Source: Haliotis rubra
Taxonomy: Eukaryota
Direction of reading: 5' to 3'
NCBI RefSeq assembly: GCF_003918875.1
Contig: NW_025767503.1
Coordinates: 248,001 to 312,000 of the forward strand
Length of the DNA stretch: 64,000 nt
In this document: in pieces, positions 21,335 to 45,166 of the stretch
Layout of the letters: every line of letters starts with the position of its first letter
Position numbering within the stretch: the first letter of the stretch is position 1
Made by a program: the position numbers and the translations under genes
Notes under the pieces: model-generated
Told to the model about the DNA's origin: nothing
The model's database searches: none
The model's input: only the letters and a program-made list of their open reading frames with translations

Positions 21335-23367
21335 TACTCTCCCAGGAAAGAAACGCATATATGAATTTCAACTGTATTTCTATGTTTATTTTGAAACATC
21401 TTGTAGGCTTTATTAGTCAATGAAATATAGCGAAATTGCACACTGGGAATGCAGACTTATCCGTCTTTGGCACCAACTCGAGGAAAGTCAGTTTGAGTGT
21501 CACATGGAGACGTGTGGTGGCACTGAAGTCAATACCTCGTGTGACCACCGTGGGCATCCAGAACTGCACGGCATCTCGTGTTGCCCAATCGCTGCCCACT
21601 CTGCCTGTAGTGCCTGTGCGAGTTGCTGAAGTGTCTGGGGCTGAGGGTTACGGCGTCGCACCCGTCTCTCCAGGGCATCCCACCGATGTTCGATCGGGTC
21701 TAAGTCCGGTGATCTTGAGGGCCAGGGGAGCACATTGATGTTGTGGTTCTGGAGGAAGTCTCTAGTGTGACGTGCTGTGTGGGGCCTGGCATTGTCTTGT
21801 TGAAACAACTCCCTCTGGCGATCAATGATTGGAAGGAGGTGTGGGCGTAGGATTTCGTCACAGTACCGTTGAGCTGTCAGGTTGCCCTGGATCATCACCA
21901 AATCACTTCTCCTACGGCAGGTGATCTCTCCCCACATCATAACACTTCCCCGGCCGAATCTGTCCACCTGGGGAACGCAAGCGTCGGCGAAACGTTCACG
22001 TCGACGTCTGTACACCCACATTCTTCCATCGCGTCGTTCCAATAGAAATCGTCATTCATCACTGAACCAGATTCTACGCCAATTCGGTAGGTTCCAGGCC
22101 TGAACGTTGGTGCACCATTGAACTCGATGTCGACGATGTTGTTGTCGAAGCATAGGGCCAAAATAAGGTCTTCTGGCACGTAAACCAGCCTCTCTCAACC
22201 TGTTCCTGACGGTCTGTGCAGAAATCCTCCTCAATCCGGGTATTTATCGAGCGGACTGGTCGCCGTAGCTGTTCGATGACGCAGGTGATGTACCCGGATG
22301 AAGCGATCCTGCGCCGCAGTGGTCGCTCGATGTCGCCCACTACGAGGGGCATCTGCTACCGCATTCTGCCGGAGATATCTCTCCCAGAGCCGTGAAATGG
22401 TGCTTTGGTGAACATTCATGCGTCGGGCAACTGCACGTTGAGACTGGCCAGCTTCAAGCAAACCAATGGCGCGGGGGCGCGGTGGGCGAACTGGCTAAAG
22501 CGCCAGGCTAGTGATCCAGCGAGCTTGAGGTGACGGGATCGAGCCCACCTGTGACCGGGTGTAAAAACCTTGGGAGTCAACTTTGTGTGCAGACTCTTTC
22601 AGTGTTGTCACAACCCCTAGTGTACAGTACACAACCCTGTGCACTTAAAAGAACCCACGAATCCGTAGGTATATGACCAGATGGTGGCCACATGAATACG
22701 TGCAAACACCCAGTTGCGGGTACAGCAACGTGCAGTGAACTTGGACAAAGTACTGTGACTATGTGTCCCAGTGCACCCAGCTGTGAATGGGTACCTCGTA
22801 AGGATGGGAATGCCACAATAACTCGGTGCGCCTAGTGGCTGCAAGAGTTTGTATGCTCCCCAGGGAGTTGAGATTGACAATACGATGTGCCGTTGAGATT
22901 GACATCCAGTGAACGAGGGAAAAAACAAAGCGCCTTTGAGCAGCTGAGCGGAGCTGGATATCGGCGCTATACAAATGTATATATGATGATATGATGATGA
23001 TGAATGGCGATATGACGGTTGGCTTCACTTAGACGTGGCATTTTGCGTTCGTCAACAATATTCCAAATACAGTGAATAATCGACAGACAGCGATCAACCT
23101 TTTATACCTATCATTGAGACTATCTGATCCCCAACTTTCACGTGTATTGCATGTGAATTGTGTATTCTGTGACACTACACGCCGAAATTGAAAATCATGC
23201 TGTAAAATACGGGTATTTTACGGATGGTGCGTTTTGTTGTGATGTTTCAAAACATAAACACCATAGGACTCATAAACAGAGCAAACCTTTTGTAAAATGA
23301 ATCACGTTTTAATTCATTGCTACATTAAATTGCTATTTTCATGATGCTTTTCTTTTTTTGGAGGGTA
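21335..23367 (-). mobile_element. Tc1-family (DD34E) transposon, defective, interrupted by a SINE
   Basis: Transposase from ATG 23041 (MPRLSEANRHIAIGLLEAGQSQRAVARRMNVHQSTISRLW after removing the SINE), then WFSDE, FQQDNARPH and WPSRSPDLDPIEHRW with 34 residues between D and E. In-frame stop after SDE and frameshifts. Imperfect TIRs TACTCTCCCAGGAAAGAAACGCAT / ATGCTTTTCTTTTTTTGGAGGGTA flanked by TA. Confidence 0.92.
22472..23002 (+). mobile_element. SINE family C (about 530 bp) nested in the Tc1 transposase
   Basis: tRNA-like head GGGGCGCGGTGGGCGAACTGGCTAAAGCG...GGGATCGAGCCC, central CAGCTGTGAATGGGTACC, 3' GCGCTATACAAAT plus (ATG)n tail. 7-bp TSD AATGGCG (22465-22471, 23003-23009). Confidence 0.9.
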
Positions 23368-24885: not shown

Positions 24886-26297
24886 GAGTGGGGAGACTGG
24901 TGTTGTGACGGAGATTAGAGATCGAGTTTCTTATTCCATCGTATCAAAATCCTTCCACGGGATCATTGAGCAAAAATATGGAGACGAGAGAGAATCGCTT
25001 GACGGCAAGAACTAAATAACTTACATATTTCAGTACATTCTATATTTAAAGGCTGTAAGTGTATCCTCCCGCTATTTCCATGTAATGAGAGGACTCCAAA
25101 TACTAAACCTGACATCTGACTAGATAATACAATATGAGATGTTCACGATATGCAATGAAATGCATTCTCTCTAAAGAAAATTCATATCCGAAATTTGTGC
25201 AAAATAGTTTAAGCCAAACTAAATCTGCCTTAATGTCTAAGTGAGATGGCAGTCACGAAGTGAAAGAAGCCGGTGCTTATCCTGCGTGGAAATGTCGCAG
25301 TGTAGTTGATCCAAATATATGGTGTCATCAAAACTTGAATCTCAGCAAACTTTTGTGACATTTAATGGACGCTGTTGTACTGATGCCGGGAGTAGGTGAG
25401 TTCACATTTATCAGTCACAGTGTAACTGGTTGTATTATGTCCTCATCGGGCCTGTGAGAAAGCTTCGACTACCATATGTGACTATTCCACAATGGAGGTG
25501 TGAACATTCCGGGTAACAATACTAAAACAGAAAAAATATCACAAAAGTCCATAAAAACTACTATAAAACAATACATAGGAAACTACTCAGGTGAAACGAT
25601 CAAGTGTTATTTGTACAATTGGTTTTTTTTTATGTATAAACCTATATATATACATCGACATGTTACCGATTTACCGTAACATGACTGAAATTTATTTTCC
25701 CAGAATATTAAGGGCCCACAATCATTACATATGACAGTATCATATACTATGCAAGAAAGGAATACAAGAGTTGAAAGGTTGGATATATATGACGGAATTT
25801 TACTGATATTCATACAGAATGAATACCAAATATGAATTTCTCATGACTGAATGTGTCAGGAATGATTTGTGCCGGTAGAAACGCGACGCAGCCATGAACA
25901 CTAACATGAAAGGAGCGTGCACCATGGAATGTTCATTGTATGTTGTCCATTTAGTGACTACACCTTACCACACTAAGCCGACCAGTGTTTCCAGGGAAAT
26001 GTCTGTAGTTCTACTTCACTGTTAGTGACTCTCTGTCTCAAAACTAATACTGACCTACCTCCTGATTCATGAATCAAACACAACCTTCTTGCCATACATC
26101 TTACAGTAAATATACCACAGAGTAATATAGCCACCACCTAGCGCACATATAGACGCACACACGCACGCACATACATGCACGCACACACACACGCACGCAC
26201 GCGCGCACACACGCACACACACAGACTCACATACATACACACTCACGCGCACATATATACTCACACACATGCACGCACATACGTGCACACACGCACA

Positions 26298-26675
26298 TGG
26301 GGAACGGTGGGCGAGCTGGCTAAGGCGCCAGGATAGTGATCCAGCGAGGTTGAAGTGTCGGGATCGAGCCCACATGTGACTGCGTGTAAAAACCTTGGAG
26401 TCAACTTTGTGTGCAGATTCTTTCAGTGTTGTGCAAACTACTATGACTATGTGTCCCAGTCCACCCAGCTGTGAATTGGTACCTCGTTAGAATGAGCAAG
26501 CCATAATAACTCGTTGCGCCTAGTGGATGCAAGAGTTGTATATTCCCCATGGAGTTGAGATTCATAATACGATGTGCCATTGAGATTGACATCCAATGAT
26601 CGAGGGAAAAAATATCAGCGCCTTGAGCATGCACTATAGTTGCCTGGATATGTGCGCTATATAAATATCCTATAA
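26298..26675 (+). mobile_element. SINE family C, internally deleted copy
   Basis: Collinear with 22472-23002; flanked by degenerate CA-rich microsatellites (about 26140-26297 and 26690-27017). Confidence 0.85.
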
Positions 26676-27260
26676 TCCTATAATATACGCGCGTACATAT
26701 ACACGCATTCACACACACACGCACGTACATATACATGCATACACGCTCTCACACACGCACATATACATGCACTCTCACACACACTCACACACACTCACAT
26801 ATACACGCACTCACAAACACGCACACACACACGCACATATGCATGCACTCACACACACGCACGCACATATACATGCACACACGCATATATACACGCACTC
26901 ACAAACACGCACATATGCATTCACCCACACACGCATATATACATGCACACACGCACTCTCACACGCACCCACATACACACACGCACACACATATGCATGC
27001 ACTCGCACACAAACGTACATAACTGACACGGGGTTGTAGAGCGGCCCCCACTCGCTTATACTGAACTCAAAATTCACATAGTATGTCAATTTTAATGCAA
27101 CTTAGGTGTTGTGTTCAATGTGGAGGTTTTCAGTGTGCGTGCGTGCGTGTGTGTGTGTGAATTGTGTTTTGTTTTTGTTCTTTCGTTTGTTTGTTTTTGT
27201 TTGTGTTTATGTCCAGTTCAGATTTTCTTTCTTTTTAAGAAACAACAGACGGCAAAGAAG

Positions 27261-30200
27261 ATGGACATTGCCATCATTGGCGTGGGATGTCGATTTCCCG
27301 GGGCTTCCTGTCTCAGGGAATTCTGGAAAGTCTTGGTGAAGGGAGAAAACCACGTAACAGACATTCCGCCAGACAGATGGAACAAGGACAGTTTCTATGA
27401 CCCGGATGTAACAGCCATGGGCAAGTTCTACTCTAAAAAAAGCGGGATTCATAAAGAAGTAAGTCTATAGCTTGTCTGTATGATCCTTCTACGAACCAAG
27501 ATGATAGTAACTTTAAACGCGGAGCGAGTTCGTGGTTGTTGAGATATTCTCCTTGTTTTATTCGTAATCAAAATACAAATACAGAATCCAAATTTGTTAG
27601 CTTCTTTGATTAGCATTGAGTGTTTAAATTTTGTTATTCCAGTTATGCAGACTTTGACAACAAACTGTTCGGTATCAGCGAGAGCGAGGCTGCCCAGATT
27701 GACCCCCAGCAGCGCCAGGTGTTGGAGTGCACGTACATGGCGCTGGAGGACGCCGGCGTCACCAGACAACATATAGCAGGACAGAACGTCGGAGTCTACA
27801 TAGGTAAGTCATGTAGCCATCACTCTGCAGGTAGATTACTAACATCGCATATTGCAACCCAGCTAACAAAACACCAGACGGGTATTTATACTTTAAAAGA
27901 TAAGGAGCGCCACACTTTCAGGTTACATTCTGTTCTGGTAAAACATACTCCCAATATTTGTTGTTTAGTTAGACGAGATCATGAGGAATTGGAGGGAAAT
28001 CCACACATGTTTTAATGGGCAGTGGGGTAGTCTTGAAGACACCATAACAAACAGTTCGATATATATAGGGGTAAAGACCCGTGCAGATCCGGGTTACAAC
28101 TGATCTTCAGTAACACATGCTTGATGCTTGTCGTAAAAGGCGACTAACGGGATCGGGTTGTCAGGCTCACTGACTCACAACACACAGTTTAATATCCATA
28201 GGGGTAAAATGTGTGAAGCCCGTTCTATTCCCAGTTGTTGTGAGGTGCGGTCTTTTTCTAAAATGTGGAAATGTTTGAAGCCCATTTCTGGTGTCCCCCG
28301 CCGTGATGTTGCTGGAATATTACTAAAAGCGGCTTAAAACCAAACTCAGTCAGTCAGTCTAAAATGTGGAGTAAATCTAATCTCGCTCACTCTGAGAGGA
28401 CACGAGTGATGACTGGTGTCTGTCTATAAGATACTCATTTACCTACCACCAGGTGCCATGAACAGCGACTTCACCGTGAGGATGACTGCCAACTCTCACG
28501 AGATCGACCACTACTCTGTTGCTGGTCTCGCAGGAAGTGTGTTAGCCAATCGTGTGTCCTACGTGTACAACCTGTCCGGACCCTCCATGGTAGTGGACAC
28601 AGCCTGTTCCTCGTCTCTGGTGGCCATACACCAGGCAAGCCTGGCCCTCCGAGCAGGTGCGTGTACATCCCGTCTCAGTAATACTTCTGTTATATTTACA
28701 ACTGGCTACCCCATATATCTTACATTCTCTTTTAAATATACCCATATGTTGGAATGCAAATGCAACGTATCAGTACATCTAGATGTCTACCTTTTCTCTG
28801 CCATGTAAAAGGTAGCTAAACAATATCTAGACATTTCATTTGTGTCTCACGCATCACAATCCTCATGTGTTGTCCAGGGGACTGTGAGATGGCGCTCTGT
28901 GGGGGCGTGAACCTGCTGCTGCACCCCACAGTGTTTGTCCCCCTCAGCAAGGCCCGGATGCTGTCCCCCAGTGGCCAGTGCCACGCCTTCTCCTCTAACG
29001 CAGACGGGTACACGAGGGGAGAGGGGTGTGGGATCGTCCTCCTCAAACCACTAGCACAGGTGAGCAAGTTTGGTATCGCGCTGCTTTCAGTTTATCAGGG
29101 CGTGTCTGCCTGATGTTGGATCATTTCTACCGGGATGAGACACGAGCACTAACACAGGAACATAATTTGCAAATGAAATCATACGTTTCTGCCACGCCTA
29201 AGGGACGCAACTCTGTATGGCGAATTGCGGCGTGTTTGAAGACTTGAGTATTCATGCCTCCAAGCTGAGGTACCCTACTCCAGTTTGTCTGGGTATTATC
29301 AACAGTAAGAACCAGAGTCTATATTGTGAAACCGAGTCACATAGTGAGATCAAACACTGTTTCATATTATGTATGTGTTATTTGGAATCAGATTAAGTGA
29401 GTAGTGTGTGTCCATGTTGAAGGCACTTCATGATGGTGACAACATTTGGGCGACGATATCTACTGGTGTAAACCAAGATGGTCGAGCGGCCCAGCCCATC
29501 ACAGCGCCATCTGGTAGCCAGCAGCTTCAGCTGCTCCAAGACCTCTACAGGGCGCATGATGTTGACCCTTACGCCGTCGAATACATTGAGGCCCACGGTA
29601 AGTCTTTGTGTGTTTGTGTTACACTATATTCTCATGGCGTTCGTTTATCTGTCAATGATCAGTGTACAGATACAGATTAGATACATAGTATGTATTCCTG
29701 AAAATATAACAGTTGATTTAATGTTTAAGGCCACTAAATTGCAATAATTTCGGAGGTTCAAATAGTCAGCTCCGAATCAATCTGATCTGATTATGTTTCA
29801 CAGGTACTGGCACCAAACTAGGCGACCCTATCGAGGTCAACGCGTTTGGAGAATTCTTTACCTCTGATGGGAATCCAAGAACACGTTACCTGGGTTCTGT
29901 AAAGACCAACATCGGCCACCTGGAACCAGCAGCAGGGGTGGCTGGTCTTATCAAGGTCCTGCTAATGATGAAACACAACACAGTCGTACCATCTCTTCAC
30001 TTCGACAAGCCAAACGAACATATAGACTTTGAAAAGTTTCGGTTTATCATTCCACAAGAACCTTCACAATGGACATCAGTTGCGAAAGTAGCTTGCCTCA
30101 ATTCATTTGGTTTTGGCGGAACTAATAGTCATGCAGTTTTACATAGTTACAATAAACCACCACGTGCCAGCAGGCCCATCTTGGGGGCTTCACATATTGT

Positions 30201-33200
30201 ATGTTTTTCAGGCAGCACCTCAGAGTCACTGAAGAAAAGTCTTGAGAACTTTCTTTCTTGTGATGATCTCACAGACGATGACCTGCCAGCATTGTCCTAC
30301 ACATCGACAGTCAGAAGGGAACATTTCCCGCATAGAAAGGCATTTGTTGTGAAGACTATTAGTGACTTGAAACAGCAAGCACAAATAATACTGAAGAGCA
30401 GAGACGTCCTTGACATTAACGCAAGCAAGTTGAAGATCATCTTCGTCTTTTGTGGGATGGGCACTGCTTGGCCAGGTATGTGTGATGGCTTCATGAAAAA
30501 CAACAAAACTTTCAGCAAAACAATCAACATGATTAATGCGTCTTTGCAAAGATTCGTCTCCTGGTCATTGACAGAGAGGCTCAGAAACGGTTATGACGTA
30601 CAAGAACCTCATTTCGGCCCAATCGCCATATTTGCTTGTCAGGTCGCTCTTGCCAAACAGTGGGAGTCCTGGGGAGTAAGCCCAGCCGCTGTTGTCGGTC
30701 AGTCAGTAGGGGAGGTGGCTGCAGCACACGTTGCTGGTATCCTGTCACTGGATGAAGCTGTGAGGGTCATCTTTCACAGGACACGAATCCTGGCTGAAGC
30801 CACAGGAGGTAAGATGGTTCTTGTCAGAAACCTTAAGACAGAGAAGGTACAAGACATTTGTGAAGAAGTTGCAAGCGTGAATATTGCAATTCGTTACAGC
30901 CCTGTGTCGTGTACAGTTAGTGGTGACTCTGCTGCCGTGGATGAGGTGAAGTCACGTCTTCAGTTGTCTCACAGTGATCTTATGATGACTGATCTCCCTG
31001 TCAGTGCCGCATACCACAGCCACCACATGGACCGATGCAAGCTGCAGTTAGACAACATACTTGCAGACCTGAAACCCTTACCAGCGAGAATACCTATGAT
31101 GTCAACAGCTGCTTCTCACTCCACAGAGGAAGATGTCACATCATCTGAATACTGGGGTACGAATGTTCGAAATCCTGTTCAGTTTGCTTCAGGAATACAA
31201 AATTCTACCTCTGACAATCATCTCAATGCATTTATAGAAATTGGTCCAAAGCCAGTATTGAAAGCTCACATGGGTGACATTTTTCAGGAAAGTACATCAT
31301 CGTGCATATGCCTTCCTTCCTTGACAGTCAAGTTTAGAGAAAAGACGATCCTGGGGACCCTCTCCGAGCTGTACCAGATGGCCATGAACATAAACTGGCA
31401 GGAGCTGTTTAACCACACAGAACCCCCAACACCAGTCCCGAGTTATGCCTTCTTTCACAAGCACCTAATGATCTTGCCTCCTATTACAGAGGAAGAAGTG
31501 TTTGGATCTAATGGAAACTCTGGAAGTCATCTCTTTGTAAAACTGTCACCTTCCACAGCCAAGTGCATACTGAACATCAGACCATCTACCTTTGGAACTG
31601 TCTATGAACACAAGGTCAAGGACATTATTGTCGTCCCAGGAGCAACCTATGTGGAAGCGGGGTTTGGAATCGCAAGATCAATGAATATTGCTGATGTTAG
31701 ACATCTAGTGGTATCTGTCAGCTTTCTGAATCCAGTAACTCTGAAAAAAGACATGTCTGTTCAATTGGATGCTGATATTGAGGATCAAAGCCAAACTACA
31801 AATGACTGCACCAAAGAATTCACCATCCAAAGTACAGGTGATGTCATTGCAAAGGGGAGAATATGGGCGTGTCACGGTGAACTTCAAGAGGAACGGATGG
31901 ACATAGAGGCCATAGAGGAGAGATGTACCCAAACAATCACCGGCGAAGAAGTGTATCAAATTCTGCAATATTCTGGATTTACATATGGAACTAACTTTGC
32001 AACCATACAATATGCATCAAGGGGGAAATCTGAGAGTCTCACAAGCTTAGCAGTCGGACAAAAGCTGAGAGAGGAGATGACCAACACTGTTATTCATCCT
32101 GCAATACTCGATGGAATGCTGCAGTCGGCAGCTGCATTCGACATGCAAGAAAGGGAATTTCTCCCAGTCGAGCTCAAGAATGTAATCGTCAGACATTCAA
32201 TGGAAACAGAAATGTTTGTTTATACAAGAATGACAGACAGCAACGGTTCCCACACATCCTTTACCTTAACACTTCTTTCACCCAATGGAACAATCATAGC
32301 AAATGTTGAAAGATTCACAACAAAATTTATAGGGTCAGATACTTTTGATATTCACAAAGCGACATTCAAAACAAGCTTGGTTTTGTTGGATTCTTTTGAC
32401 GTCTCACAGAACAGTGTTGATACTGGAACTGTCATCTTCACCAACGTAGATCTAACCAGTTTAGAACTAGCTTGTGTCATACATGAATTGGATCACATGG
32501 GTGTTGAAGGCACAAGACACGCTCTTGACTCTGTCATACACAACATCAAGCAAATCTGTTTCGTCTTTGCGGTAACTGACCTCCAAACTGACAGAGGAAA
32601 ACCCTGCAAAAGAACTCACAAGTAGGATTATGTCCTTGAGACTCATTGCCCTTTACCTAGCCAGTAGAGGAGTGTCTATTCCTCTGGTGATAATTTCAGA
32701 AATACAAAACAGTGGAGAAAATGTTGCAAGTGGCTGTCTCAGTGAAGCTGTCAAAGGTTTCATCAGGTGTGTCTTAAGGGAGTACAGATCTCTTCACATT
32801 CAGCTTGTGGATGTTCTAGTTGACAATGACAGGAACTTCTTAGAAAGGCTTCCAGGGATATTATCACAATGCAGATCTGAAGATTTCAAAAGGTACCCTG
32901 AGATAGGTCTCCACAATGATAAAGTCTACATGCACACAATTCTGTCACACCCAAGCCTGCAACCACTGTTTCGATCAGTTACAATGGATGAACGCTCTGA
33001 GGGTATGCTCTGCACAAGATCAAAGACATCAATAGTCAGTCCGTTTTTCTACCCCAAACAAAAGACAGCTACATCCATGAAAGATATGAGTGATATAGTG
33101 GTGACTTCTGTGGTTGTGCATAGCCCCATGCTGCATGGACTTCGCAGTGGGTGCCCTGCAGGATCCACGGCCAATATACACCCAATTCTGTGTCTTGAAA

Positions 33201-36200
33201 CAAATGGTAAATTGTCAGTCGGATCCAGACGTAGCCATCCTGATGTAATAACCCTCTTTCCTTCAAATGTTTGCAAGACTATCCAGGTTCCAAAGTGCTG
33301 CACCATAGACGTAGAACAGGTGCCTGGTTATGTTCCGGGTCATCTTACTATACTGTATCTGATGTGGAGTTTGTCCATTAATACAGCAAGGAACAATGTA
33401 GTCATTTTGTACACAAACAGCACTAAGCCATTTGCAAATGCAATGTCACATTTGTTTCTTTCACAAGGGACAAAGAATGTGTCATTAGTCAAGCCAAACG
33501 ATACTGTACAGCAAAGAAGTGACTCTGTAACTTTGATTTCGACAGTTTTATTGACAGAAGTGGAAGCCAAAAGACTCTTGACATCGTTCACAAATGTACA
33601 GAAAATAATTTGCTTTGAACCTATCACTAGACGATCTGTCCTGGAGTACCTACTTGGAGCTTTGCAAAACCTGCAACTTCATGTCATACGATCATTTGAA
33701 ATATTTTCTCCAAGGGTAATGACTGCAACAGTACCCAAAATGATTAAATGGATAAAATCCCACAGTAAGACGGTGCTCAAAATATGTCACAGCTTCAGTG
33801 ACATCGTGGTATCAAAGCAACAAGAAACAACCACCCCACTTAACATTTCAGAAGTTCTTAATAGCACCGTGTTGTCCTTGTCTTCAGATAGCAACTTGGA
33901 CATGAATTCTATGATGACACCAAGTTCCCACCTGTTCCAGCAGACAGGTTCCTATCTGGTTGTGGGAGGTCTCACAGGACTGGGATGGGAATGTGTGACA
34001 TTCCTTGCAGCAAGAGGAGCTGGATGTGTGGTCATTCTGAGTAGACGTAAGCCTAATCCTGAACGACAAGCAGATATGGACCATCTATCTCAGCAACATA
34101 ACTGCTACGTAACATCCATTCAAGCTGACGTCACAGTCTACAAGGATCTGGAATCAGCTATATCAAAGGTAAAGACACATTTGAAACCTCTCAAGGGTGT
34201 ATTCTACGGTGCAGCTGTTTTACAGGATGCTTCCCTCTCTGAGATGACAAAGGAAAAACTCGTCACAGCTATGTCTCCAAAGGTAACAGGTGCTTGGAAT
34301 CTTCATATCCTGACTGCAGATCTTCCTCTTGATTTCTTTGTCCTGCATTCTTCTGGTGCAGCTGTTCTGGGGAATGCTGGTCAGTCAAACTATGGAGCTG
34401 GTAATGGATTCTTGGACGGATTGGCAGTGTACAGGAGGCAGCGTGGAAAGAGTGGCCAGAGCATCAATTGGGGACCTCTCGACCTTGGGATGCTAGAGAA
34501 CAAGGGATCTGTTCTGAGGAAGTTGGAGAGTCAAGGATACATGGTCATTGGTAGGAAGGACATAAGTCAGTGCCTGTCACACATGCTAATGCTGAACGAG
34601 CCCCAAGCCTTGATGTGTAGAATAGACAGACAGAAAATGGCAGAACAATTACAGAGGGATAAGGAAACAACCCTAATGGTACGACTTAAGACATATTTGG
34701 AACCTGCCATGAAGATCATAAATCAAAAGGCAACATCGGAAGGGGGCAAATGTTCTTTCAGTGTTGACAGACTACAGACTTGCACAGAGGAGGAGGGGCT
34801 GCAGATGTTGCGGGAATATGTAAAACAGCTTGTGTGTGATAAGGCTTTGTTGGATATAAAGAGTTTTCAGCTGGACGCCAACATGAAGGATCAAGGGGTG
34901 GACTCAATGTATGCCATGGAAATTACAGGCGGAATCTTGTCAGACATTGGAGTAAAGCTGTCCACTCACGAAATCCAGCTACAATCAACATGCAGCATTG
35001 CCAGAAGAATACTGGACTTACTGTCAGGTAAAGGGGAGGAACAGACGCAAGCCTATGACATGGAGTCCGTCATAACTAAACAAGCAATAAGCATGTCAAT
35101 TGCAAGGTCAGTTTGTGGACTGAAGACAAACTGTGATCACAACATGGGTTTTGTAATCGTCAGTACCATTTCTGTACCAGATGTGGTAAATATATCAACA
35201 TTGATAGCTGTGGCAAAAGAGTGTGTGTCGCGCCATCAGGTCACAAGAACCTCTTACATTCTTAGCCATGACAAAGTCTCCACAAACATGTTGCCTCTGG
35301 AGGATGCCTTGGACTTCCGTGTACTGTCCGGAGAAGACCTGTCCGAGGTCAGGAAACACACAGAGGAGCCAATGCATCTTCAGCACAAGAGCCCTTTACG
35401 ATTCATATTTCTTACAAGGTCCCTACAGCTCAGAATGATTTTCCACAGACTTGCATTTGATTTGAAAGCCATCACAATCTTTGTGAAGGAACTTGAAAGC
35501 ATGGCCAATGCAGCACAGCTGGGTAAACCCCTGGAAGATGTTGTAACTGATCTAGATGAGGATATTGCGAAGGAAATCCAGAAAGTTCTTGCTCCGGACT
35601 TCAAGAGAGTAAACCAGTTTTGGAAGACAAAGACAAAGTACATACCTTACAACAGTCTATCGAAAGGGTCAGTTATACACAACGTACAAACTGGTCACAT
35701 CTTCCTCACAAGACCAGTAAACAATCACCTGTACACAAAAATCATGAAATACGTAAAGGACAGAGGCCTCACTCCTTTTGATTATCTTGCTAGTATCTAC
35801 CAGCTGTTTCTTGCCTTTGTCAGCAGCAAAACAACATCAACCATCACGACCTCTGTTGACCTTCGTGGCCTGGTTCCTGCTCTGACTAGAACGCTGGGGA
35901 GATGCACGAACTTCATTCCCCTGATCTGCCAAATACCAGAGGACACCACTACAGTGGAAGAGTTCCTGAAGCTTAACAAGAAGACTATACAACACTTCAC
36001 CCAGTATGCAATATATCCGTCAGAAGAAATCAAAAAGCTGGTTCCCGAGGACCAAAACCTTGGTACAAACTACTTCATATATGAAACTGATATCATCACC
36101 AATACATCTAACCAGTTGACAATAGACATGCCAGTCATCTTTGATTCCTCCACTGAAACATTCATGTACATTTGGCAGAGGAAGGAGACGAGGCTCATGG

Positions 36201-36400
36201 AGATGAGATTTCATCTCAGGAAGGATCTGTTCACTGTCTCCAGGGCAGAGGTCCTTGTCAAGGCATTCCTAGGTCTAGTGGAAGATTCTTTGAACTTCCC
36301 TGGATCAACTGTAGGGCATCTAAGACAACAAAAGTACATGACCTTGGACGAAAGGAGTTCCAAGAAACATGTCCTATCAGCATTGTGCTCTCTGATGTAG
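27261..36400 (+). CDS. Animal type I polyketide synthase, KS-AT-DH-psiKR-degenerate ER-KR-ACP-C, about 2,504 aa; exons 27261-27458, 27643-27803, 28453-28656, 28878-29059, 29423-29597, 29804-36400; two +1 frameshifts in this assembly
   Basis: KS: [25 protein letters not shown] (Cys codon 28605), [39 protein letters not shown]: GQSVG (Ser codon 30703), AYHS. DH: [23 protein letters not shown]: [22 protein letters not shown]: GVDSM (Ser codon 34904). C-like: [17 protein letters not shown]. Five GT-AG introns; corrected length 7,515 nt is divisible by 3. Confidence 0.93.
28270..28358 (+). mobile_element. SINE family A 3' part in PKS intron 2 (a family B 5' fragment lies at about 28075-28175)
   Basis: GAAGCCCATTTCTGGTGTCCCCCGCCGTGATGTTGCTGGAATATT...AAACTCAGTCAGTCAGTC. 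Confidence 0.8.
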
Positions 36401-37375
36401 CGCTGTAACATCCACCTCTGGTGGTGCACGATTAACTTGGTCTTCCATCATTGTGCTCTCTGATGTAGCCCTATAACATCCACCTCTGGTGGTGCACGAT
36501 TAACATGGTCTTCCATCAGTGTGCTCTCTGATGTAGTGCTGTAACATCCACCTCTGGTGGTGCACGATTAACATGTCCTATCAGCATTGTGCTCTCTGAT
36601 GTAGCACTGTAACATCCAGCTCTGGTGGTGCACAATTACCGTAACATGGTTTTCCATCAGTGTGCTCTCTGATGTAGCTCTATAACATCCACCTCTGGTG
36701 GTGCACGATTAACATGGTCTTCCATCAGTGTGCTCTCTGATGTAGCCCTAAAACATCCACCTCTGGTGGTGCGAGATTAACATGGTTTTCCATCAGTGTG
36801 CTCTCTGCTGTGGTGCTGTAACATCCACCTCTGGTGGTGCACGATTAACATGGTCTTCCATCAGTGTGCTCTCTGATGTAGCACTGTAACATCCACCTCT
36901 GGTGGTGCACGATTAACATGGTCTTCCATCAGTGTGCTCTCTGATGTAGCACTATAACATCCACCTCTGGTGGTGCACGATTAACATGGTCTTCCATCAG
37001 TGTGCTCTCTGATGTAGCTCTGTAACATCCACCTCTGGTGGTGCACGATTAACATGGTCTTCCATCAGTGTGCTCTCTGATGTAGCACTGTAACATCCAC
37101 CTCTGGTGGTGCACGATTAACATGGTCTTCCATCAGTGTGCTCTCTGATGTAGCTCTGTAACATCCACCTCTGGTGGTGCACGATGGTCTTTAACATGGT
37201 CTTCCATCAGTGTGCTCTCTGATGTAGCACTATAACATCCACCTCTGGTGGTGCACGATTAACATGGTCTTCCATCAGTGTGCTCTCTCATGTAGCTCTG
37301 TAACATCCACCTCTGGTGGTGCACGATTAATTTGGTCTTCCATCAGTGTGCTCTCTGATGTAGCTCTGTAACATC
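36367..37375. repeat. Minisatellite, 68-bp unit, about 15 copies, starting inside the last PKS codons
   Basis: Unit CATCAGTGTGCTCTCTGATGTAGCACTGTAACATCCACCTCTGGTGGTGCACGATTAACATGGTCTTC. Confidence 0.95.
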
Positions 37376-38944: not shown

Positions 38945-41900
38945 TCATTCATACATGTCTGAATACAACTCCTGCCCAATACGTATATACTCGTCCTTCT
39001 CCGCTGGGGTCATCTGTTCCACCATGTCGGGTGTCACTTCCTGGTATGGCACCTTGCGGATACCAACTGTTACCATGGGAACACTCTCTTCTTCATCATC
39101 ACTCTCCATTTCTTCAACAACTGTGTAACACAAAACATCTTCAGAAAATAATCAGAGTTATAATGTATACTTAGGTATCTTATGTACATATCTAATGTAG
39201 GTAAAAATAAAAGAACATTTACTTCTCAAGTAATTACCGTAAGTTGGCATTGATTTCAGTGTGGTATCACAGTTTGTAGAGTCAAGGTTAAATAAGGGAG
39301 TGTGACAAGTGGAGAAACAATGTTACCAAGCAAGGAAACAAGTTACCACACCAAGGTGATCGATGAAGGGTTGTCCTGTTTTTCACACCATATAAGGTGC
39401 ACACCTATCGTAATGAAGGAGTGCCCTGAGTTATATCTCCCCTGTTTATCACCATATAAGGTGCACCTATCCCGTAATGAAGGAGATGTATATCTCCCCT
39501 GTTTATCACACCATATAAGGTGCACCTATCGTAATGAAGGAGATGTATATCTCCCCTGTTTATCACACCATATAAGGTGCACCTATCGTAATGAAGGAGG
39601 TGTATGTATATCTCCCCTGTTTATCACACCATATAAGGTGCACCTATCGTAATGAAGGAGTTGTATATCTCCCTGTTTATCACACCATATAAGGTGCACC
39701 TATCGTAATGAAGGAGATGTATATCTCCCCTGTTTATCACACCATATAAGGTGCACCTATCGTAATGAAGGAGTTGTATATCTCCCCTGTTTATCACACC
39801 ATATAAGGTGCACCTATCTGTTTATCACACCATATAAGGTGCACCTAAATGAAGGAGTTGTATATCTCCCCTGTTTATCACACCCTTTATCGTAATGAAG
39901 GAGTTGTATATCTCCCACCATATAAGGTGCACCTATCGTAATGAAGGAGTTGTATATCTCCCCCCTGTTTATCACCTACCATATAAGGTGCACCTATCGT
40001 AATGAGAAGGAGTTGTATATCTCCCCTGTTTATCACACCATATAAGGTGCACCTATCGTAATCGTAATGAAGGAGTTGTATATCTCCCTGTTTATCACAC
40101 CATATAAGGTGCACCTATCATAATGAAGGAGTTGTATATCTCCCTGTTTATCACACCATATAAGGTGCACCTATCGTAATGAGGGAGTTGTATATATCCC
40201 CTGTTTATCACACCATATAAGGTGCACCTATCATAATGAAGGAGTTGTATATCTCCCCTGTTTATCACACCATATAAGGTGCACCTATCGTAATGAAGGA
40301 GTTGTATATCTCCCCTGTTTATCACACCCACACCATATAAGGTGCACCCTATCGTAATGAAGGAGTTGTATATCTCCCTGTTTATCACACCATATAAGGT
40401 GCACCTATCGTAATGAAGGAGTTGTATATCTCCCCTGTTTATCACACCATATAAGGTGCACCTATCGTAATGAAGGAGTTGTATATCTCCCTGTTTATCA
40501 CACCATATAAGGTGCACCTATCGTAATGAAGGAGTTGTATATCTCCCCTGTTTATCTGTTTATCACACCATATAAGGTGCACCTATCGTAATGAAGGAGT
40601 TGTATATCTCCCGTTTATCACACCATATAAGGTGCACCTATCGTAATGAAGGAGTTGTATATCTCCCCTGTTTATCACACCATATAAGGTGCACCTATCG
40701 TAATGAAGGAGTTGTATATCTCCCCTGTTTATCACACCATATAAGGTGCACCTATCGTAATGAAGGAGTTGTATATCTCCCCTGTTTATCACACCATATA
40801 AGGTGCACCTATCGTAATGAACACCTGTTTATCACACCATATAAGGTGCACCTATCGTAATGAAGGAGTTGTATATCTCCCCTGTTTATCACACCATATA
40901 AGGTGCACCTATCGTAATGAAGGAGTTGTATATCTCCCGTTTATCACACCATATAAGGTGCACCTATCGTAATGAAGGAGTTGTATATCTCCCCTGTTTA
41001 TCACACCATATAAGGTGCACCTATCGTAATGAAGGAGTTGTATATCTCCCCTGTTTATCACACCATATAAGGTGCACCTATCGTAATGAAGGAGTTGTAT
41101 ATCTCCCCTGTTATCACACCATATAAGGTATCACACCATATAAGGTATCACACCATATAAGGTATCACACCAACTTCTAAATGGCAATTAAAGAAGTCAT
41201 CAAATTTTCAGTTCAAGTAGAACTAAGAATTCAACTGAGATAATTATGGGGATGCTAAGACGAAACAATTAACAGGGCACAGCTAGATTGTTTACCCTAT
41301 AAAGACATAACATTGTGATTTGGAATAGGAAATAATCAGCTCCTCTAGTTTTTAGGCCTGAAACAATTCAGTTCAATCGAAAATCGAATCTGACACCTTA
41401 GTTTCGATTTTTGCTAACCATTATCACTATTTCGATTCGATATTTGAGTGCTGTTCTGTGTTCGATATTTGAGTGCTGTTCTGTGTTCGATATTTGAGTG
41501 CTGTTCTGTGTTTAAACATCATGTTTGAAAAAGGTTACGTCATTTACATTCCTGATTTCCTAGTCAAATCTTGGAAAAAGTTTTCAGTGTGATGATTTGT
41601 TTAATAAACTCTGAGAGTTAAATGAAATCTGATGATTTTACTTGTATGAAGAATCGAATCGAAAATGATCGAATCGATGGTCCAATATCAAAAATCGAAT
41701 CGAGGTCTGGGTGAATCATTGCAACCCTACTAGTTTGGGATCTTGTACTTTCTCAATGCATCACATGTTTGACATTACTTTATTCCTCCTTGATGAATAT
41801 GTTGAAAATTATTTCACAATTATGATTATCATTACTTTTCCAAAAATGTTTCTTTAACATACTGCACAAGACATCCTACTTGAAAGACGCTCCACAAACA

Positions 41901-44900
41901 AGCTTTGTTTGTAAGGAGCTATCCTTTAAACAGAAACAGGAGTTACCAGTTTATTAACAGCTGTAAGACTTAGATATATGAGAAAAGAATATCTTTCCTG
42001 CACCAGAGACATTACAACATTACTCCAGCATGAGGTAAATGCTGGAAAGCTTTCTTGATGCAGTGGCAGATAACAGAAACACAGCAACAAACCTCCATGT
42101 GATGGACCAGGTTTGGGGGCTTCATCTTCTGATGAACTGCTGGAGTTTTCTTCCGCTCTGTCTGTGGGGATCCGAAGTCTGGCACCAGGCTTGGATTGCT
42201 CGTGAACCAGCAGGGCGTTCATCACCTCGTCATTGGCGTTCACCTGAGACAAGTCCTGAGATGGTCCAGCCTCGTAAGCACTCTCCATCTAAAGAATGGA
42301 AAAAGTTGACATTACCATGTTGAGATTGTACTGCTTTCAGTAATATTGCAGGAAAAAGATGACAGCCTGTCAGTAATCTGGTCAGGGCAGCCATTGATGT
42401 TAGTCCATGTGATCTGGGTATTCTGACATTTAGTCACATCTTATGATCAACATTAGTTACTAGGGACCTTTCATTACTTACTGCACTGTATGGTGAAACC
42501 ACAACCACAGGTACAGTGAAACCACAGCCATGGGTACAGTGAAACCACTACTACAGGTACAGTGAAACCACAACCATGGGTACAGTGAAACCACTACTAT
42601 AGGTACAGTGAAACCACAACCATGGGAATGGTATAACCACAACCACAGGTACAGTGAAACCACTACTATAGGTACAGTGAAACCACAACCATGGGAATGG
42701 TATAAGCACAACCACGGGTACAGTGAAACCACAACCATGGGAATGGTATAAGCACAACCACGGGTACAGTGAAACCACTACTATAGGTACAGTGAAACCA
42801 CAACCACAGGTACAGTGAAACCACAACCATGGGTACAGTGAAACCACAACCACAGGTACAGTGAAACCACAACCACAGGTACAGTGAAACCACTACTATA
42901 GGTACAGTGAAACCACAACCACAGGTACAGTGAAACCACAACCACAGGTACAGTGAAACCACTACCATGGATGCAATATGAAGGAACAATATCAAGGCAA
43001 CGTTCAGTACTGCCGATAGGCACACCTGATGAAACCAGGTTGAGTCACACTGAGGCAGTCTCACACTCTAGCCACTGGAATGAAGCCTGTGTCCAGCAAA
43101 ATACAGATCAGTCTGGCAAGCTCATCAATACAAGACCATATATTACCACTAAATCATAAAAAGGATATATGCAGGGAGACACAGAGGTTTTGGGTGCACA
43201 CTGCTAAGGTACTAAATGGCAGGAAAACAATCAAACAAGCAAAATGTTTACATTTCAGGAAAGTGAGTGAGTTGAGTTTTATGCCGCACTCAGCAATAGT
43301 TCAGCTATAAGGCGGGGATCAGTAAAGAATCGAGTCTGGACCAGACAATTCAGTGATCAACAGCATGAGCATTGGTCTGCGCAATTGGGAACCGATGAAA
43401 TATGTCAACCAAGTCAGCGAGCCTGACCACCCGATCCCGACAGTTGCCTCTGACGACAAGCATTGGTTACTGAAGGCACATTCTAACCCGGACCTTTACG
43501 GGTACATTTCAGGAAAGGGACTCTAAACAATTGACTGCAAAATGTTTGGTGAATAAATAACAATTGCTTGTTTATTACCCTTCACAGCACAAGCTTCCCA
43601 GAACCAGTAATTCATTACTTGTTTATTACCCTTCACAGCAATACAAACTTCCCAGAACCAGTAATTCATTTCATGAGAAAAGGTAAGGAATGCAAATTCA
43701 ACATGTTGAACGACTACATCAAGGGTTCAGTGATAAATATCTAGTGATGATGTTACCTGTGAGTCGATGACTGTGGCGCCCTCTACAGTGCTCTTGGACA
43801 TCCATTCAGGCACCTCTTTCTTCTGTACTGTCGCATTCTTTTCATCCTCGTCCATGCTGATGGTGATGCTGTTGTCTGTGTAGCCAAAGCGGTTGTTCCG
43901 AGACAGTTCCCCACTCCAGACCATTTTTTCCGCATCTACGTTGGTCCTGTTCTTGTCACTTGGTGCCCTGCGGATCATGCACAGAAATAACATGAGCCTT
44001 ACAGTACCTCACAGAACTATGTTAGACACTTTCCTCAACAACTTGAAATCGTTCTAAACTAAGCTCAATACAACATGATGACCAATAATAACACTCCCAA
44101 ACTACTCACTAATAGTCTCCATGTCCCACACCATGCTCACTGTTTACCACTACTGCTACTGATCTTCCAGGTTGCTAATGCAGAGCACGATTCGTATTGG
44201 CTTCAAACATTTGGTTAATCTTTAGATACATGAAAAAGATTGTTACATAACAAATACTTGTTGTTTTTTTCTCAACATGCTCAATTCATTAATATTAACA
44301 TAAAGGAAGGAATATTGTGTATCCGTGGCATGTGAAGACATCTGATTTACACTGTATTCCACACTCATTGTTATCCTTCAGCAGCAGGAGTCATAGTTTA
44401 TCATGTTCACACACAAAACCATTGCTGCAAACAAAGTGATGATATATTGACTTCAGTCTTTAATCATTATCAACAGTATGACCAAACATCAACAAGGAAT
44501 GATTGACACACAACATACCTTGGTAATAATTTCTTGATGTCAATAGGTTCCCGGTTCTAAGATTTCAGGAGCAAGTTTGATATCCTCACAATCCCGTAAT
44601 AAGTCATAAATAACCTGAATCTGTTCATTAAATTTGGCCATGGTTGTGCGAGCATCCTTCTTTGGCATGGAGCTCTCATCCTCCTCCACTTCAGTGTGGC
44701 AGTAGGTGCACTGTAAGGAGCCTGTCATTGGGTCTACAAGCTGCCCAACCTCCAGATCCGTGTATGACTTCAAACAGTTTGGACATTTAAATGAGGCACG
44801 ACTTGTGTTATCCCGTTCCTCAAGCTCAATCTTTCTCCTCATGTGATCAAGCTTATATTTCACCACATTCACAAAAACATTATAGTTGATGAAATAATAA

Positions 44901-45166
44901 TTGTGTCTTGTTGTCTTTCCTTCTGTATCAGTCTCTACCCTCATTCTCACTTTCAGTATCTTGTCTACTTTCAAGGAGTTGATGATTGCTCGAAGTTGTT
45001 TCCTCTCAAATTTGAGCAACTCTAACATATCATCCTCCTTGATACAGGGATTCCGGACGAGCATGTCAATAACTATGGCTGTTTCAACAGTGTAGAACCC
45101 TCGCACAATCAGCCGGATCAGTCGCTTGAGGGAGTCAGGAACTTCAGTTGCTACGTCAGTTTCCAT
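38945..45166 (-). CDS. GTF2E1: General transcription factor IIE subunit 1 (TFIIE-alpha), about 409 aa; exons 45166-44519, 43967-43757, 42288-42093, 39120-38945; one +1 frameshift at 44550-44552
   Basis: [43 protein letters not shown], zinc ribbon CPNC...[16 protein letters not shown], acidic C-terminus [26 protein letters not shown] introns in compatible phases; corrected length 1,230 nt. Confidence 0.96.
39375..41170. repeat. Minisatellite, 57-bp unit, about 31 copies, in the last GTF2E1 intron
   Basis: Unit CACCATATAAGGTGCACCTATCGTAATGAAGGAGTTGTATATCTCCCCTGTTTATCA. Confidence 0.97.
41353..41729. mobile_element. hAT-like MITE in a GTF2E1 intron
   Basis: TAGG...CCCTA ends, subterminal AATCG/CGATT repeats, near-perfect 8-bp TSD CTAGTTTT / CTAGTTTG. 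Contains three copies of a 24-bp unit. Confidence 0.7.
42494..42968. repeat. Minisatellite, 23-bp unit, about 20 copies
   Basis: Unit GGTACAGTGAAACCACAACCACA and variants. Confidence 0.95.
43264..43502 (-). mobile_element. SINE family B, full-length, in a GTF2E1 intron
   Basis: Reverse complement of the 9990-10230 element. 15-bp TSD TACATTTCAGGAAAG (43249-43263, 43503-43517). Confidence 0.9.

What the first reader, a model, noticed from the sequence alone, without database searches (positions are those of the whole stretch)
27261..36400. Animal-encoded PKS ending in a condensation-like domain and lacking a functional ER: candidate polyene-conjugate pathway
Seen: an intron-containing host gene with intact catalytic motifs for KS (Cys-His-His), AT (Ser), DH (His/Asp), KR (Rossmann motif and Tyr) and ACP (Ser). 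There is no methyltransferase motif, the ER-position segment has no glycine-rich NADPH-binding motif, and a C-like domain of about 400 aa replaces the thioesterase. Established: iterative KS-AT-DH-KR without an active ER yields conjugated polyenes (as in budgerigar MuPKS, psittacofulvins); many mollusc shell pigments are unmethylated polyenes; other animal PKSs act in pigmentation or biomineralisation (sea urchin Pks1/Pks2, fish otolith PKS). Inference: this enzyme makes a polyene and offloads it through the C domain onto an amine or alcohol, possibly for shell or mantle pigment or mineralisation. No tailoring genes are adjacent.
Basis: partly seen in the sequence, partly recalled or inferred. 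Interest (0 to 1): 0.88.

Follow-up and report, generated by a model that had tools for sequence, protein, structure and literature searches.

The report
Abalone polyketide synthase ending in condensation domain
This is a real abalone gene for a large polyketide-making enzyme of a mollusc family already described in the literature; it has a dead reductase domain and an unusual end domain, its product is unknown, and the copy in this assembly carries two small frame breaks that are probably sequencing errors.

Summary
Window 27261-36400 (+) is a six-exon Haliotis gene encoding about 2,500 aa: KS-AT-DH-psiKR-ER-like-KR-ACP-C. All catalytic motifs are intact, and there is no MT or TE. The "ER-position segment" folds as an enoylreductase (AlphaFold pLDDT 86; 566-580 residues align to MAS psiKR-ER-KR), but it has no glycine-rich NADPH loop. 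That loss is shared by the whole animal PKS clade. The end domain is a complete NRPS-type condensation fold (profile E 1e-29, TM about 0.77). Its motif is HRLAFDL: the second, catalytic His is Arg, as in fungal LovB-like CON domains and glycopeptide X domains, which do not form amide bonds.

The gene is not new in kind. Lin et al. 2024 already described mollusc PKSs with and without C domains and with introns only at the N-terminus.

The assembly copy has two frame breaks relative to the intact, syntenic H. rufescens ortholog: +1 nt in an A7 run and -2 nt at 32593-32610. dN/dS is 0.23-0.25 on both sides, and 0.16 for the C domain.

A polyene-like product is plausible by analogy with MuPKS. C-mediated amide or ester offloading is doubtful. 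There is no evidence for a shell-pigment role.

The parts
27261..27458 (+). Exon 1 (KS N-terminus, start ATG). It contains a frame break: one surplus base in the A7 run at 27435-27441 relative to the H. rufescens ortholog.
   Evidence: tblastn of P0001. Comparison with L001 exon 1 and its conserved GTAAGT donor. Pfam ketoacyl-synt.
27643..27803 (+). Exon 2 (KS). The acceptor is homologous to the H. rufescens model.
28453..28656 (+). Exon 3 (KS), with the active-site Cys motif DTACSSS at 28596-28616.
28878..29059 (+). Exon 4 (KS).
29423..29597 (+). Exon 5 (KS C-terminal half). HGTGT spans the exon 5/6 junction.
29804..36400 (+). Giant exon 6: end of KS, AT, DH, psiKR, ER-like, KR, ACP, C and the stop codon. 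It is one uninterrupted 2,201-codon ORF in H. rufescens (L001:13412-20014).
30439..31323 (+). AT domain. Active-site GQSVGE at 30697-30714; AAYHS at 31006-31020.
   Evidence: Pfam Acyl_transf_1 E 8e-53
31600..32331 (+). DH domain. His motif at 31609-31638; Asp motif DGMLQ at 32110-32124.
   Evidence: Pfam PKS_DH_N and PS-DH
32593..32610 (+). Second frame break (frame 1 to frame 2): 16 nt here against 18 nt in H. rufescens, in the DH-psiKR linker and next to A4/C3/A4 runs. As assembled, frame 1 stops at 32623-32625.
32594..32878 (+). N-terminal part of the KR structural subdomain (psiKR).
   Evidence: AlphaFold model residues 1-95 align with the psiKR of KR structures.
32879..33808 (+). ER-fold pseudo-domain (ER0). 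At the position of the Gly-rich NADPH loop the sequence is [16 protein letters not shown] (33398-33445). The H. rufescens Gnomon model P0001 splices out 32888-33763.
   Evidence: dN/dS 0.32
33947..34480 (+). KR catalytic domain. GGLTGLG at 33965-33985; LQD at 34217-34237; Ser/Tyr/Asn at 34349-34405.
   Evidence: Pfam KR E 1.3e-58
34814..34990 (+). ACP. The phosphopantetheine Ser lies in GVDSM at 34895-34909.
   Evidence: Pfam PP-binding
35138..36397 (+). Terminal condensation-fold domain. The motif FHRLAFDL at 35441-35464 replaces HHxxxDG.
   Evidence: dN/dS 0.16

Best explanation
This is the abalone (Haliotis sp.) ortholog of H. rufescens 'mycolipanoate synthase-like' (P0001). It belongs to the canonical animal type I PKS clade, in the mollusc subgroup that ends in a condensation domain.

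Shown:
- The domain order is KS-AT-DH-psiKR-ER0-KR-ACP-C, with intact KS, AT, DH, KR and ACP motifs.
- The ER-fold domain has lost its NADPH loop.
- The end domain is a complete NRPS-type C fold whose second motif His is Arg.
- Purifying selection acts on every domain.

Inferred:
- The enzyme works iteratively on acetyl and malonyl units. The related duck ApPKS AT prefers malonyl-CoA 64-fold.
- It reduces and dehydrates each beta-keto group (the B-type LQD KR plus DH would give trans double bonds).
- It cannot reduce the enoyl bond in cis, so the ACP-bound chain is an unmethylated, unsaturated polyketide.
- The terminal C-like domain then acts on that chain in a non-canonical way: release, or chain processing or cyclisation as in LovB-like CON domains, rather than ordinary His-catalysed amide formation.

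The two frame breaks in this assembly are most likely homopolymer-type assembly errors, or at most very recent lesions.
For: Identity and orthology:
- 84% nt identity over 7.1 kb, with flanking synteny to L001.
- 81% aa identity over the full length.

Domains and motifs.

ER0:
- AlphaFold model pLDDT 85.8, pTM 0.78.
- Foldseek E about 1e-31 to MAS-like DH-ER-KR.
- VIA aligns 566-580 of 634 residues to psiKR-ER-KR chains, against about 300 for KR-only chains.
- No Gly-rich loop in any of the 34 or 21 clade members aligned.

C domain:
- Family profile against PDB: E 2e-29 to bacitracin, gramicidin and surfactin C domains. The family His aligns to the first His of HHxxxDG and Lys/Arg to the second.
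- AlphaFold model pLDDT 86.1; TM 0.75-0.78 to NRPS C domains.

Selection: dN/dS 0.25 before and 0.23 after the break; C domain 0.16; ER0 0.32.

Clade: vertebrate PKSs are sister to a mollusc clade in which 31 of 38 rows carry a C domain.

Literature:
- PMC10764717: mollusc PKSs with and without C, and N-terminal introns.
- PMC6334511: metazoan PKSs are KS-AT-DH-ER-KR-ACP with an inactive ER; MuPKS makes polyunsaturated C14-C18 chains.
- PMC13492342 and PMC6260248: the LovB-like HRxxxDG CON domain is essential but does not form amides.
Against: - No product, expression or activity data exist for this gene or for any mollusc PKS-C.
- As assembled the gene is broken twice, so it could be a young pseudogene in this species.
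- A trans-acting ER, as LovC is for LovB, cannot be excluded and would change the product.
- Some C domains keep activity without the second His. The review PMC11546977 cites VibH-type cases and ORF18, which has HQxxxDM. Ordinary acyl transfer therefore remains possible.
- Other mollusc members keep that His (NHxxxD or SHxxxD in Patella, Mytilus, Pinctada and Pecten), so the ancestral role may have been catalytic condensation.
Confidence: 0.6

Rival explanations
1. One reading: the enzyme makes a conjugated polyene, and the terminal C domain offloads it by amide or ester formation onto a free amine or alcohol, for shell or mantle pigment or mineralisation.
For: - ER0 plus active KR and DH, with the MuPKS precedent (PMC6334511).
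- The C domain is complete, sits directly after the ACP and is the most constrained domain (dN/dS 0.16).
- Precedents exist for release by C-superfamily enzymes. PapA5 offloads MAS products (cited in PMC6334511). A truncated fungal PKS-NRPS makes N-acyl amides (Hai & Tang 2018, listed in the references of PMC13492342; not read here). ORF18, with HQxxxDM, forms intermolecular amides (PMC11546977).
Against: - The second His of HHxxxDG is Arg, as in CON and X domains, which do not form amides (PMC6260248, PMC11546977).
- No acceptor-supplying or tailoring gene lies nearby.
- No expression or pigment link was found in the literature searches.
Confidence: 0.2
2. The copy in this genome is a pseudogene: both frame breaks are real, and only KS-AT-DH fragments, or nothing, are made.
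For: There are two independent frame-breaking indels relative to the intact ortholog. As assembled, frame 1 ends at a TAG at 32623.
Against: - There is no other stop or indel in about 7.5 kb of CDS.
- dN/dS is 0.23 over the 1,262 codons downstream of the second break, the same as upstream.
- Both breaks sit in or beside homopolymer runs (A7; A4/C3/A4), the typical site of long-read indel errors.
- Other first-stage notes on this genome list frameshifts in conserved genes, including CRLS1 (unchecked).
Confidence: 0.25
3. LovB-like mode: a separate trans-acting enoylreductase works with the dead cis-ER. The product is then partly saturated rather than a full polyene, and the C-like domain assists cyclisation or chain-length control.
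For: - The end of the architecture is the same as in LovB-like iPKSs (ER0-KR-ACP-C with HRxxxD), where a trans-ER is required and CON is essential (PMC13492342, PMC7870829 abstract).
- The authors of PMC6334511 also say they cannot exclude a trans-ER for duck ApPKS.
Against: - No ER-like gene lies in the 64-kb window.
- No CMeT domain is present.
- The mollusc C profile matches bacterial LCL C domains far better (E 1e-29) than LovB or MokA CON (E 3e-9 and 2e-11), so any likeness is convergent.
- MuPKS alone gave polyunsaturated products (PMC6334511).
Confidence: 0.12

Closest known systems
Mollusc canonical PKS clade, C-domain subtype (Lin, Li, Krug & Schmidt 2024, Nat Commun 15:236; PMC10764717)
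   Same: - KS-AT-DH-...-KR-ACP followed by a Condensation_LCL domain.
- The few introns are all at the N-terminus, followed by a giant 3' exon.
- Haliotis is listed there as having a canonical PKS.
- Relatives carrying a C domain were found here in Haliotis, Patella, Liolophura, Pomacea, Bradybaena, Pecten, Argopecten, Mya, Mytilus, Sinanodonta, Potamilus and Pinctada.
   Different: Nothing in kind. Added here: the ER-fold pseudo-domain, the His-to-Arg motif state in both Haliotis C-bearing paralogs, and per-domain selection values.
Vertebrate animal PKSs (budgerigar MuPKS, duck ApPKS, fish otolith PKS)
   Same: - Sister clade.
- Same KS-AT-DH-psiKR-ER0-KR-ACP core, collinear over the whole DH-to-KR region.
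- ER without an NADPH loop.
- No MT.
- AAYHS AT motif.
   Different: - Vertebrate proteins stop after the ACP, with no C domain.
- Their AT has GHS where molluscs have GQS.
- Only MuPKS has a known product.
Fungal LovB-like highly reducing iPKSs with a C-terminal CON domain (LovB, MokA, ClaE)
   Same: - They end in ER0-KR-ACP-C.
- The C motif has Arg in place of the second His (HRxxxDG against HRLAFDL here).
- No A-T module follows.
   Different: - Fungal enzymes carry a CMeT domain and need a trans-ER.
- The mollusc C profile is much closer to bacterial LCL C domains than to CON, so the shared motif is probably convergent.
- The motif Gly is Leu here.
Mycobacterial MAS plus PapA5
   Same: - Closest solved structures for the psiKR-ER-KR region.
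- An iterative PKS without a TE, whose product is offloaded by a C-superfamily acyltransferase (PMC6334511).
   Different: - The MAS ER is active.
- PapA5 is a separate protein with a canonical motif (from general knowledge, not tested here).
Glycopeptide NRPS X domain
   Same: C fold with HRxxxDD in place of HHxxxDG (PMC11546977). X-domain structures appear among the fold matches (ranks 20 and 29-30).
   Different: It is a bacterial, non-catalytic P450-recruiting domain inside an NRPS. No P450 partner is indicated here.

Membership tests
Canonical animal type I PKS clade (mollusc subgroup with C domain) | KS and the core are closer to PKSs than to animal FAS or AFPK. | tested here: met
   - The ortholog's KS scores CurL 378, MAS 339 and LovB 315 bits against human and pig FAS 273-283. 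EcPKS1/2 are not among the 60 best.
- Nearest named proteins are mollusc and then vertebrate PKSs.
- The tree groups it with mollusc PKSs, SH-aLRT 99.
- No FAS or AFPK sequence could be put in the tree.
Canonical animal type I PKS clade (mollusc subgroup with C domain) | Domain order KS-AT-DH-(ER-like)-KR-ACP-C, with no MT and no TE. | tested here: met
Canonical animal type I PKS clade (mollusc subgroup with C domain) | Few introns, all near the N-terminus, with the rest in one giant exon. | tested here: met
   Five GT-AG introns lie within the KS; exon 6 is 6.6 kb. This is the pattern stated in PMC10764717.
Canonical animal type I PKS clade (mollusc subgroup with C domain) | Encoded in the animal genome, not a symbiont or contaminant. 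| tested here: met
   Introns; synteny with the H. rufescens chromosome-scale contig, including TFIIE-alpha.
MuPKS-type polyene synthase | ER domain lacks the NADPH-binding motif. | tested here: met
MuPKS-type polyene synthase | Product is a conjugated polyene. | not testable with these tools
   Needs expression and LC-MS/UV-Vis.
MuPKS-type polyene synthase | Protein ends at the ACP and lies in the vertebrate clade. | tested here: not met
   A C domain follows the ACP. The gene lies in the mollusc sister clade.
LovB-like fungal iPKS | C-terminal condensation domain with an HRxxxDG motif. | tested here: met
   The motif is FHRLAFDL: His, Arg and Asp are in register with HHxxxDG. The Gly is Leu.
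LovB-like fungal iPKS | CMeT domain between DH and psiKR. | tested here: not met
   No MT hit, and only about 80 aa lie between DH and psiKR.
LovB-like fungal iPKS | C domain shares descent with CON. | tested here: inconclusive
   The profile hits LovB and MokA CON at E 3e-9 and 2e-11, but bacterial LCL C domains at 1e-29. No C-domain tree with fungal CON sequences was made.
LovB-like fungal iPKS | Dedicated trans-acting enoylreductase partner. | not tested
   None lies in the window. The rest of the genome was not searched.
Canonical NRPS condensation domain (LCL) | Two-lobed CAT-like V-shaped fold, full length. | tested here: met
   pLDDT 86; TM 0.75-0.78 over about 430 columns.
Canonical NRPS condensation domain (LCL) | HHxxxDG with the second, catalytic His. 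| tested here: not met
   The second His is Arg and the Gly is Leu.
Canonical NRPS condensation domain (LCL) | A downstream A-T module supplies the acceptor. | tested here: not met
   The stop codon comes 29 codons after the end of the Pfam Condensation match (36310). The stop is conserved in H. rufescens.

The most novel reading that the evidence does not exclude
The Haliotis terminal C-like domain has independently reached the same His-to-Arg state as fungal LovB-like CON domains. Like them, it would be an essential chain-processing domain that does not form amides (cyclisation, chain-length gating or an unusual release). Animal PKS-C enzymes would then be a convergent counterpart of LovB-type synthases, making cyclised or otherwise processed polyenes rather than amine or alcohol conjugates.
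Probability: 0.2. Interest if true: 0.65.

Novelty: new member of a known kind. Interest (0 to 1): 0.38.

Why it matters
No mollusc PKS of the canonical animal clade has a known product, and how the related vertebrate enzymes release their chains is also unknown. This locus, and above all its intact H. rufescens ortholog, gives a clean full-length template of about 2,500 aa. That template includes 292 codons that the public gene model wrongly removes.

It could be used to express a PKS-C enzyme and ask two questions: whether an ER-dead animal PKS makes polyenes in molluscs, and what a C domain without its catalytic His does. The result would bear on mollusc polyene pigments and defensive chemistry. 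It would also bear on the unexplained CON domain of the statin-type synthases. As a finding in this window, though, it is an additional member of a family already on record.

Tried and rejected
- A short intron to explain the frame change at 32.6 kb. The candidate GT...AG pairs around 32572-32640 give lengths of 51, 54 and 69 nt, all multiples of three. The ortholog reads straight through. Rejected.
- A frame-preserving alternative splice for exon 1/2 (donor 27462, acceptor 27651). Rejected after comparison with L001. The strong homologous sites are conserved, and the alternative removes the conserved GFIxNYAxFD stretch.
- Sequence searches for the ER-position segment: Pfam at E up to 10, and a family profile against PDB. 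Nothing relevant came up. Only the fold prediction identified it.
- A tblastx comparison of the downstream TFIIE region with L001 to gauge assembly indel errors. Uninformative.
- Literature searches for abalone PKS expression or shell-colour links. These gave only an unassignable 'PpsB' gene in a gonad study, and nothing in the H. iris mantle paper.
- Hai & Tang 2018 could not be read.
- FAS and AFPK reference sequences could not be fetched as ids, so the tree lacks them.
- The species of the window was not identified. It is a Haliotis other than rufescens, with dS about 0.44.
Full report
**What is there.** On the + strand, Pfam finds a ketosynthase split over several short open frames between 27.1 and 29.7 kb. 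Two long open frames follow, 29791-32622 in frame 1 and 32576-36397 in frame 2. Together they carry the end of the KS, then AT, PS-DH, KR, PP-binding and a Condensation domain (E 9.7e-16, covering profile positions 23-440 of 456).

The best database relative is H. rufescens 'mycolipanoate synthase-like' (P0001, 84% identity). Its genomic locus, L001, aligns to the window at 84% nucleotide identity over 7.1 kb. Flanking matches exist on both sides, and the same TFIIE-alpha neighbour lies downstream. The window is therefore the orthologous locus in another Haliotis species (dS about 0.44).

**Gene model.** Using P0001 as a guide, the exons are:
- 27261-27458
- 27643-27803
- 28453-28656
- 28878-29059
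- 29423-29597
- 29804-36400

All introns are GT-AG. This gives about 2,504 codons and 81% amino-acid identity to the full H. rufescens reading. In H. rufescens the last exon is one uninterrupted 2,201-codon ORF (L001:13412-20014).

The public Gnomon model P0001 splices out the equivalent of window 32888-33763 (292 codons) and swaps the last residues for a downstream exon. That segment is open in both species and evolves at dN/dS 0.33. It aligns without a gap to the paralogs P0056 and P0002 and to vertebrate PKSs. It is therefore coding, and the public model is too short.

**Frame breaks.** The assembly differs from the intact ortholog at two places.
- In exon 1 an A7 run (27435-27441) stands where H. 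rufescens has AAAAAG. This gives 198 nt against 197 nt before a conserved GAA|GTAAGT donor. Read as assembled, the conserved GFIxNYAxFD stretch is lost.
- In the DH-psiKR linker, 16 nt (32593-32610) stand where H. rufescens has 18. This shifts frame 1 to frame 2, and frame 1 then stops at 32623.

Short-intron explanations fail, because the candidate lengths are multiples of three. There are no other stops or frame-changing indels. dN/dS is 0.25 upstream and 0.23 downstream of the second break. Both sites are in or beside homopolymer runs. Other first-stage notes on this genome list frameshifts in conserved genes such as CRLS1 (unchecked). I judge assembly error more likely (about 0.7) than a real, very young pseudogene.

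**Catalytic motifs.** In a 21-sequence alignment of mollusc and vertebrate relatives the window has:
- KS: DTACSSS, HGTGT, GGTNSH
- AT: GQSVGE with AAYHS
- DH: [10 protein letters not shown] and DGMLQ
- KR: GGLTGLG, the Ser/Tyr/Asn triad, and an LQD motif, which by established KR typing indicates a B-type KR
- ACP: GVDSM

The Gln in the AT motif is shared by all mollusc members, whereas vertebrates have His, so it is a lineage trait and not a defect. No methyltransferase is detected, and the DH-to-psiKR spacing (about 80 aa) leaves no room for one.

**The ER-position segment.** The roughly 310 residues encoded by 32879-33808 hit no Pfam family, even at E 10. A 34-member family profile finds no ER in the PDB either. 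An AlphaFold model of 32594-34495, built on that alignment, is confident (pLDDT 85.8, pTM 0.78). It shows an alpha/beta psiKR piece, a beta-rich lobe, a Rossmann-like lobe and then the KR.

Foldseek's best matches are the DH-ER-KR regions of the MAS-like PKS, MAS, human FAS, a modular PKS and LovB (E down to 3e-31). VIA-align matches 566-580 of 634 residues to psiKR-ER-KR chains, but only about 300 to KR-only chains. The segment is therefore an ER-fold domain.

At the strand-loop position where active ERs carry the Gly-rich NADPH loop, the window reads [16 protein letters not shown]. No clade member aligned, mollusc or vertebrate, has glycines there. This agrees with published statements that the ER of metazoan PKSs lacks the NADPH motif, and that the MuPKS product is polyunsaturated for that reason (PMC6334511). 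The domain is still constrained (dN/dS 0.32), presumably for structural reasons.

**The terminal domain.** A 34-member family profile matches bacterial LCL-type C domains (bacitracin, gramicidin and surfactin synthetases) at E about 1e-29 over essentially the full length. It matches MokA and LovB CON only at 2e-11 and 3e-9. The AlphaFold model (pLDDT 86.1, pTM 0.86) superposes on NRPS C domains at TM 0.75-0.78.

In the profile alignment the family's conserved His aligns with the first His of HHxxxDG. The second, catalytic His is Arg in the window (FHRLAFDL), in H. rufescens and in the H. cracherodii paralog. It is Lys, Ala or Pro in many others. Patella, Mytilus, Pinctada and Pecten have N/S-H-x-x-x-D and so keep that His. 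The motif Asp is invariant. The C domain is the most constrained part of the protein (dN/dS 0.16), so it has a function.

**What is known about that motif state.** Fungal LovB-like iPKSs end in a CON domain with HRxxxDG. In ClaE the domain is essential and works in trans. The Arg is dispensable, the Asp is required, and the role is unresolved (PMC13492342). The MokA CON crystal structure shows a blocked acceptor entry and is read as unable to form amides (PMC6260248). Glycopeptide X domains have HRxxxDD and are recruitment scaffolds (PMC11546977).

The same review notes C domains that work without the canonical His, including ORF18, which has HQxxxDM and forms intermolecular amides. PapA5 offloads MAS products in trans (PMC6334511). 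Release by acyl transfer is therefore possible but not favoured. A non-canonical processing or release role is at least as likely.

**Placement.** In a quick ML tree of the KS-end/AT/DH region (57 rows, bacterial outgroup), the vertebrate PKSs (no C domain) are sister to a mollusc clade (SH-aLRT 99). Within that clade the window pairs with P0001, inside a Haliotis group that also holds a C-bearing paralog (P0056) and a C-less one (P0002). In the mollusc clade, 31 of 38 rows carry a C domain, and the C-less ones are nested, with a minimum of three changes.

The similarity ranking of the C domains follows the same order as the core, which fits vertical inheritance. Named C-bearing relatives come from chitons, limpets, abalone, caenogastropods, land snails and many bivalves. 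Many unnamed 2,200-2,350-aa ENA and Logan proteins start inside the KS. They look like the giant last exon called as a single ORF. The tree has no FAS or AFPK sequences, because none could be fetched. The PDB score ranking and the literature stand in for that test.

**Novelty.** Lin et al. 2024 (PMC10764717) state that the mollusc PKS clade has two architectures, with and without C domains, and that its few introns are concentrated at the N-terminus. Their supplement shows PKS_PP followed by Condensation_LCL, and lists Haliotis as having a canonical PKS. ER inactivity in metazoan PKSs is also published. The finding is thus a correct reading of a member of a known but biochemically uncharacterised family.

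Added here:
- fold-level identification of ER0;
- the His-to-Arg state of the Haliotis C domains and its parallel with LovB-like CON domains;
- per-domain selection values;
- correction of the public ortholog model;
- the two frame breaks.

**Function.** The best-supported mechanism is iterative extension with malonyl units. The related ApPKS AT prefers malonyl-CoA 64-fold (PMC6334511). Each cycle would include full KR and DH processing but no cis enoyl reduction, giving an unmethylated unsaturated chain. The terminal C-like domain would then handle that chain in a way that does not rely on the canonical His. [quoted passage not shown] Nothing here links the gene to shell, mantle or mineralisation, and no tailoring genes lie in the window.

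Noticed in passing
window 36384-37375: A 68-bp tandem array (14.4 copies, 91% matches) starts inside the last codons of the PKS gene. Its unit contains the ...CSLM-stop sequence, so the 3' UTR is a minisatellite seeded from the gene's end. It does not align to the H. rufescens locus.
   Followed up: partly
L001:10001-21524 (H. rufescens model P0001): The public Gnomon model removes 876 nt of constrained coding sequence (most of the ER-like domain) as an 'intron' and replaces the conserved C-terminus with a downstream exon. The genomic ORF L001:13412-20014 is uninterrupted.
   Followed up: yes
AT motif, window 30697-30714: All mollusc members of the clade have GQSxGE instead of the usual GHSxG around the AT active-site Ser. 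Vertebrate members keep GHS.
   Followed up: partly
P0203 (Branchiostoma floridae, 3113 aa): An amphioxus PKS carries a C domain with a canonical HHxxxD motif. In the tree it branches just outside the vertebrate + mollusc PKS clade. Its C domain is only weakly similar to the mollusc ones (44 bits). PKS-C architectures are therefore not confined to molluscs, but common origin is unclear.
   Followed up: partly
window 52025-57894, 59336-61277, 39432-41129, 42493-42967: Large satellite arrays (53-bp unit with about 110 copies; 26-bp unit with about 75 copies in all; 57-bp unit with about 30 copies; 23-bp unit with about 21 copies). They explain the strong GC and AT skew of the last 12 kb.
   Followed up: no
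window 26131-27036: A CA-rich low-complexity or microsatellite tract lies directly upstream of the PKS start codon. It reads as long open 'THTHT' frames in all three + strand frames.
   Followed up: no
window 21500-22042 (-) and 44540-45166 (-): A DDE_3 transposase remnant lies upstream. Downstream is a TFIIE-alpha exon (TFIIE_alpha plus Zn ribbon), syntenic with H. rufescens.
   Followed up: partly
proteins P0057, P0061, P0062, P0064, P0066, P0076, P0081, P0142 and others: Many unnamed ENA and Logan proteins of 2,200-2,350 aa begin inside the KS and end with the C domain. They look like the single giant last exon of mollusc PKS-C genes called as one ORF by prokaryote-style gene finders.
   Followed up: partly
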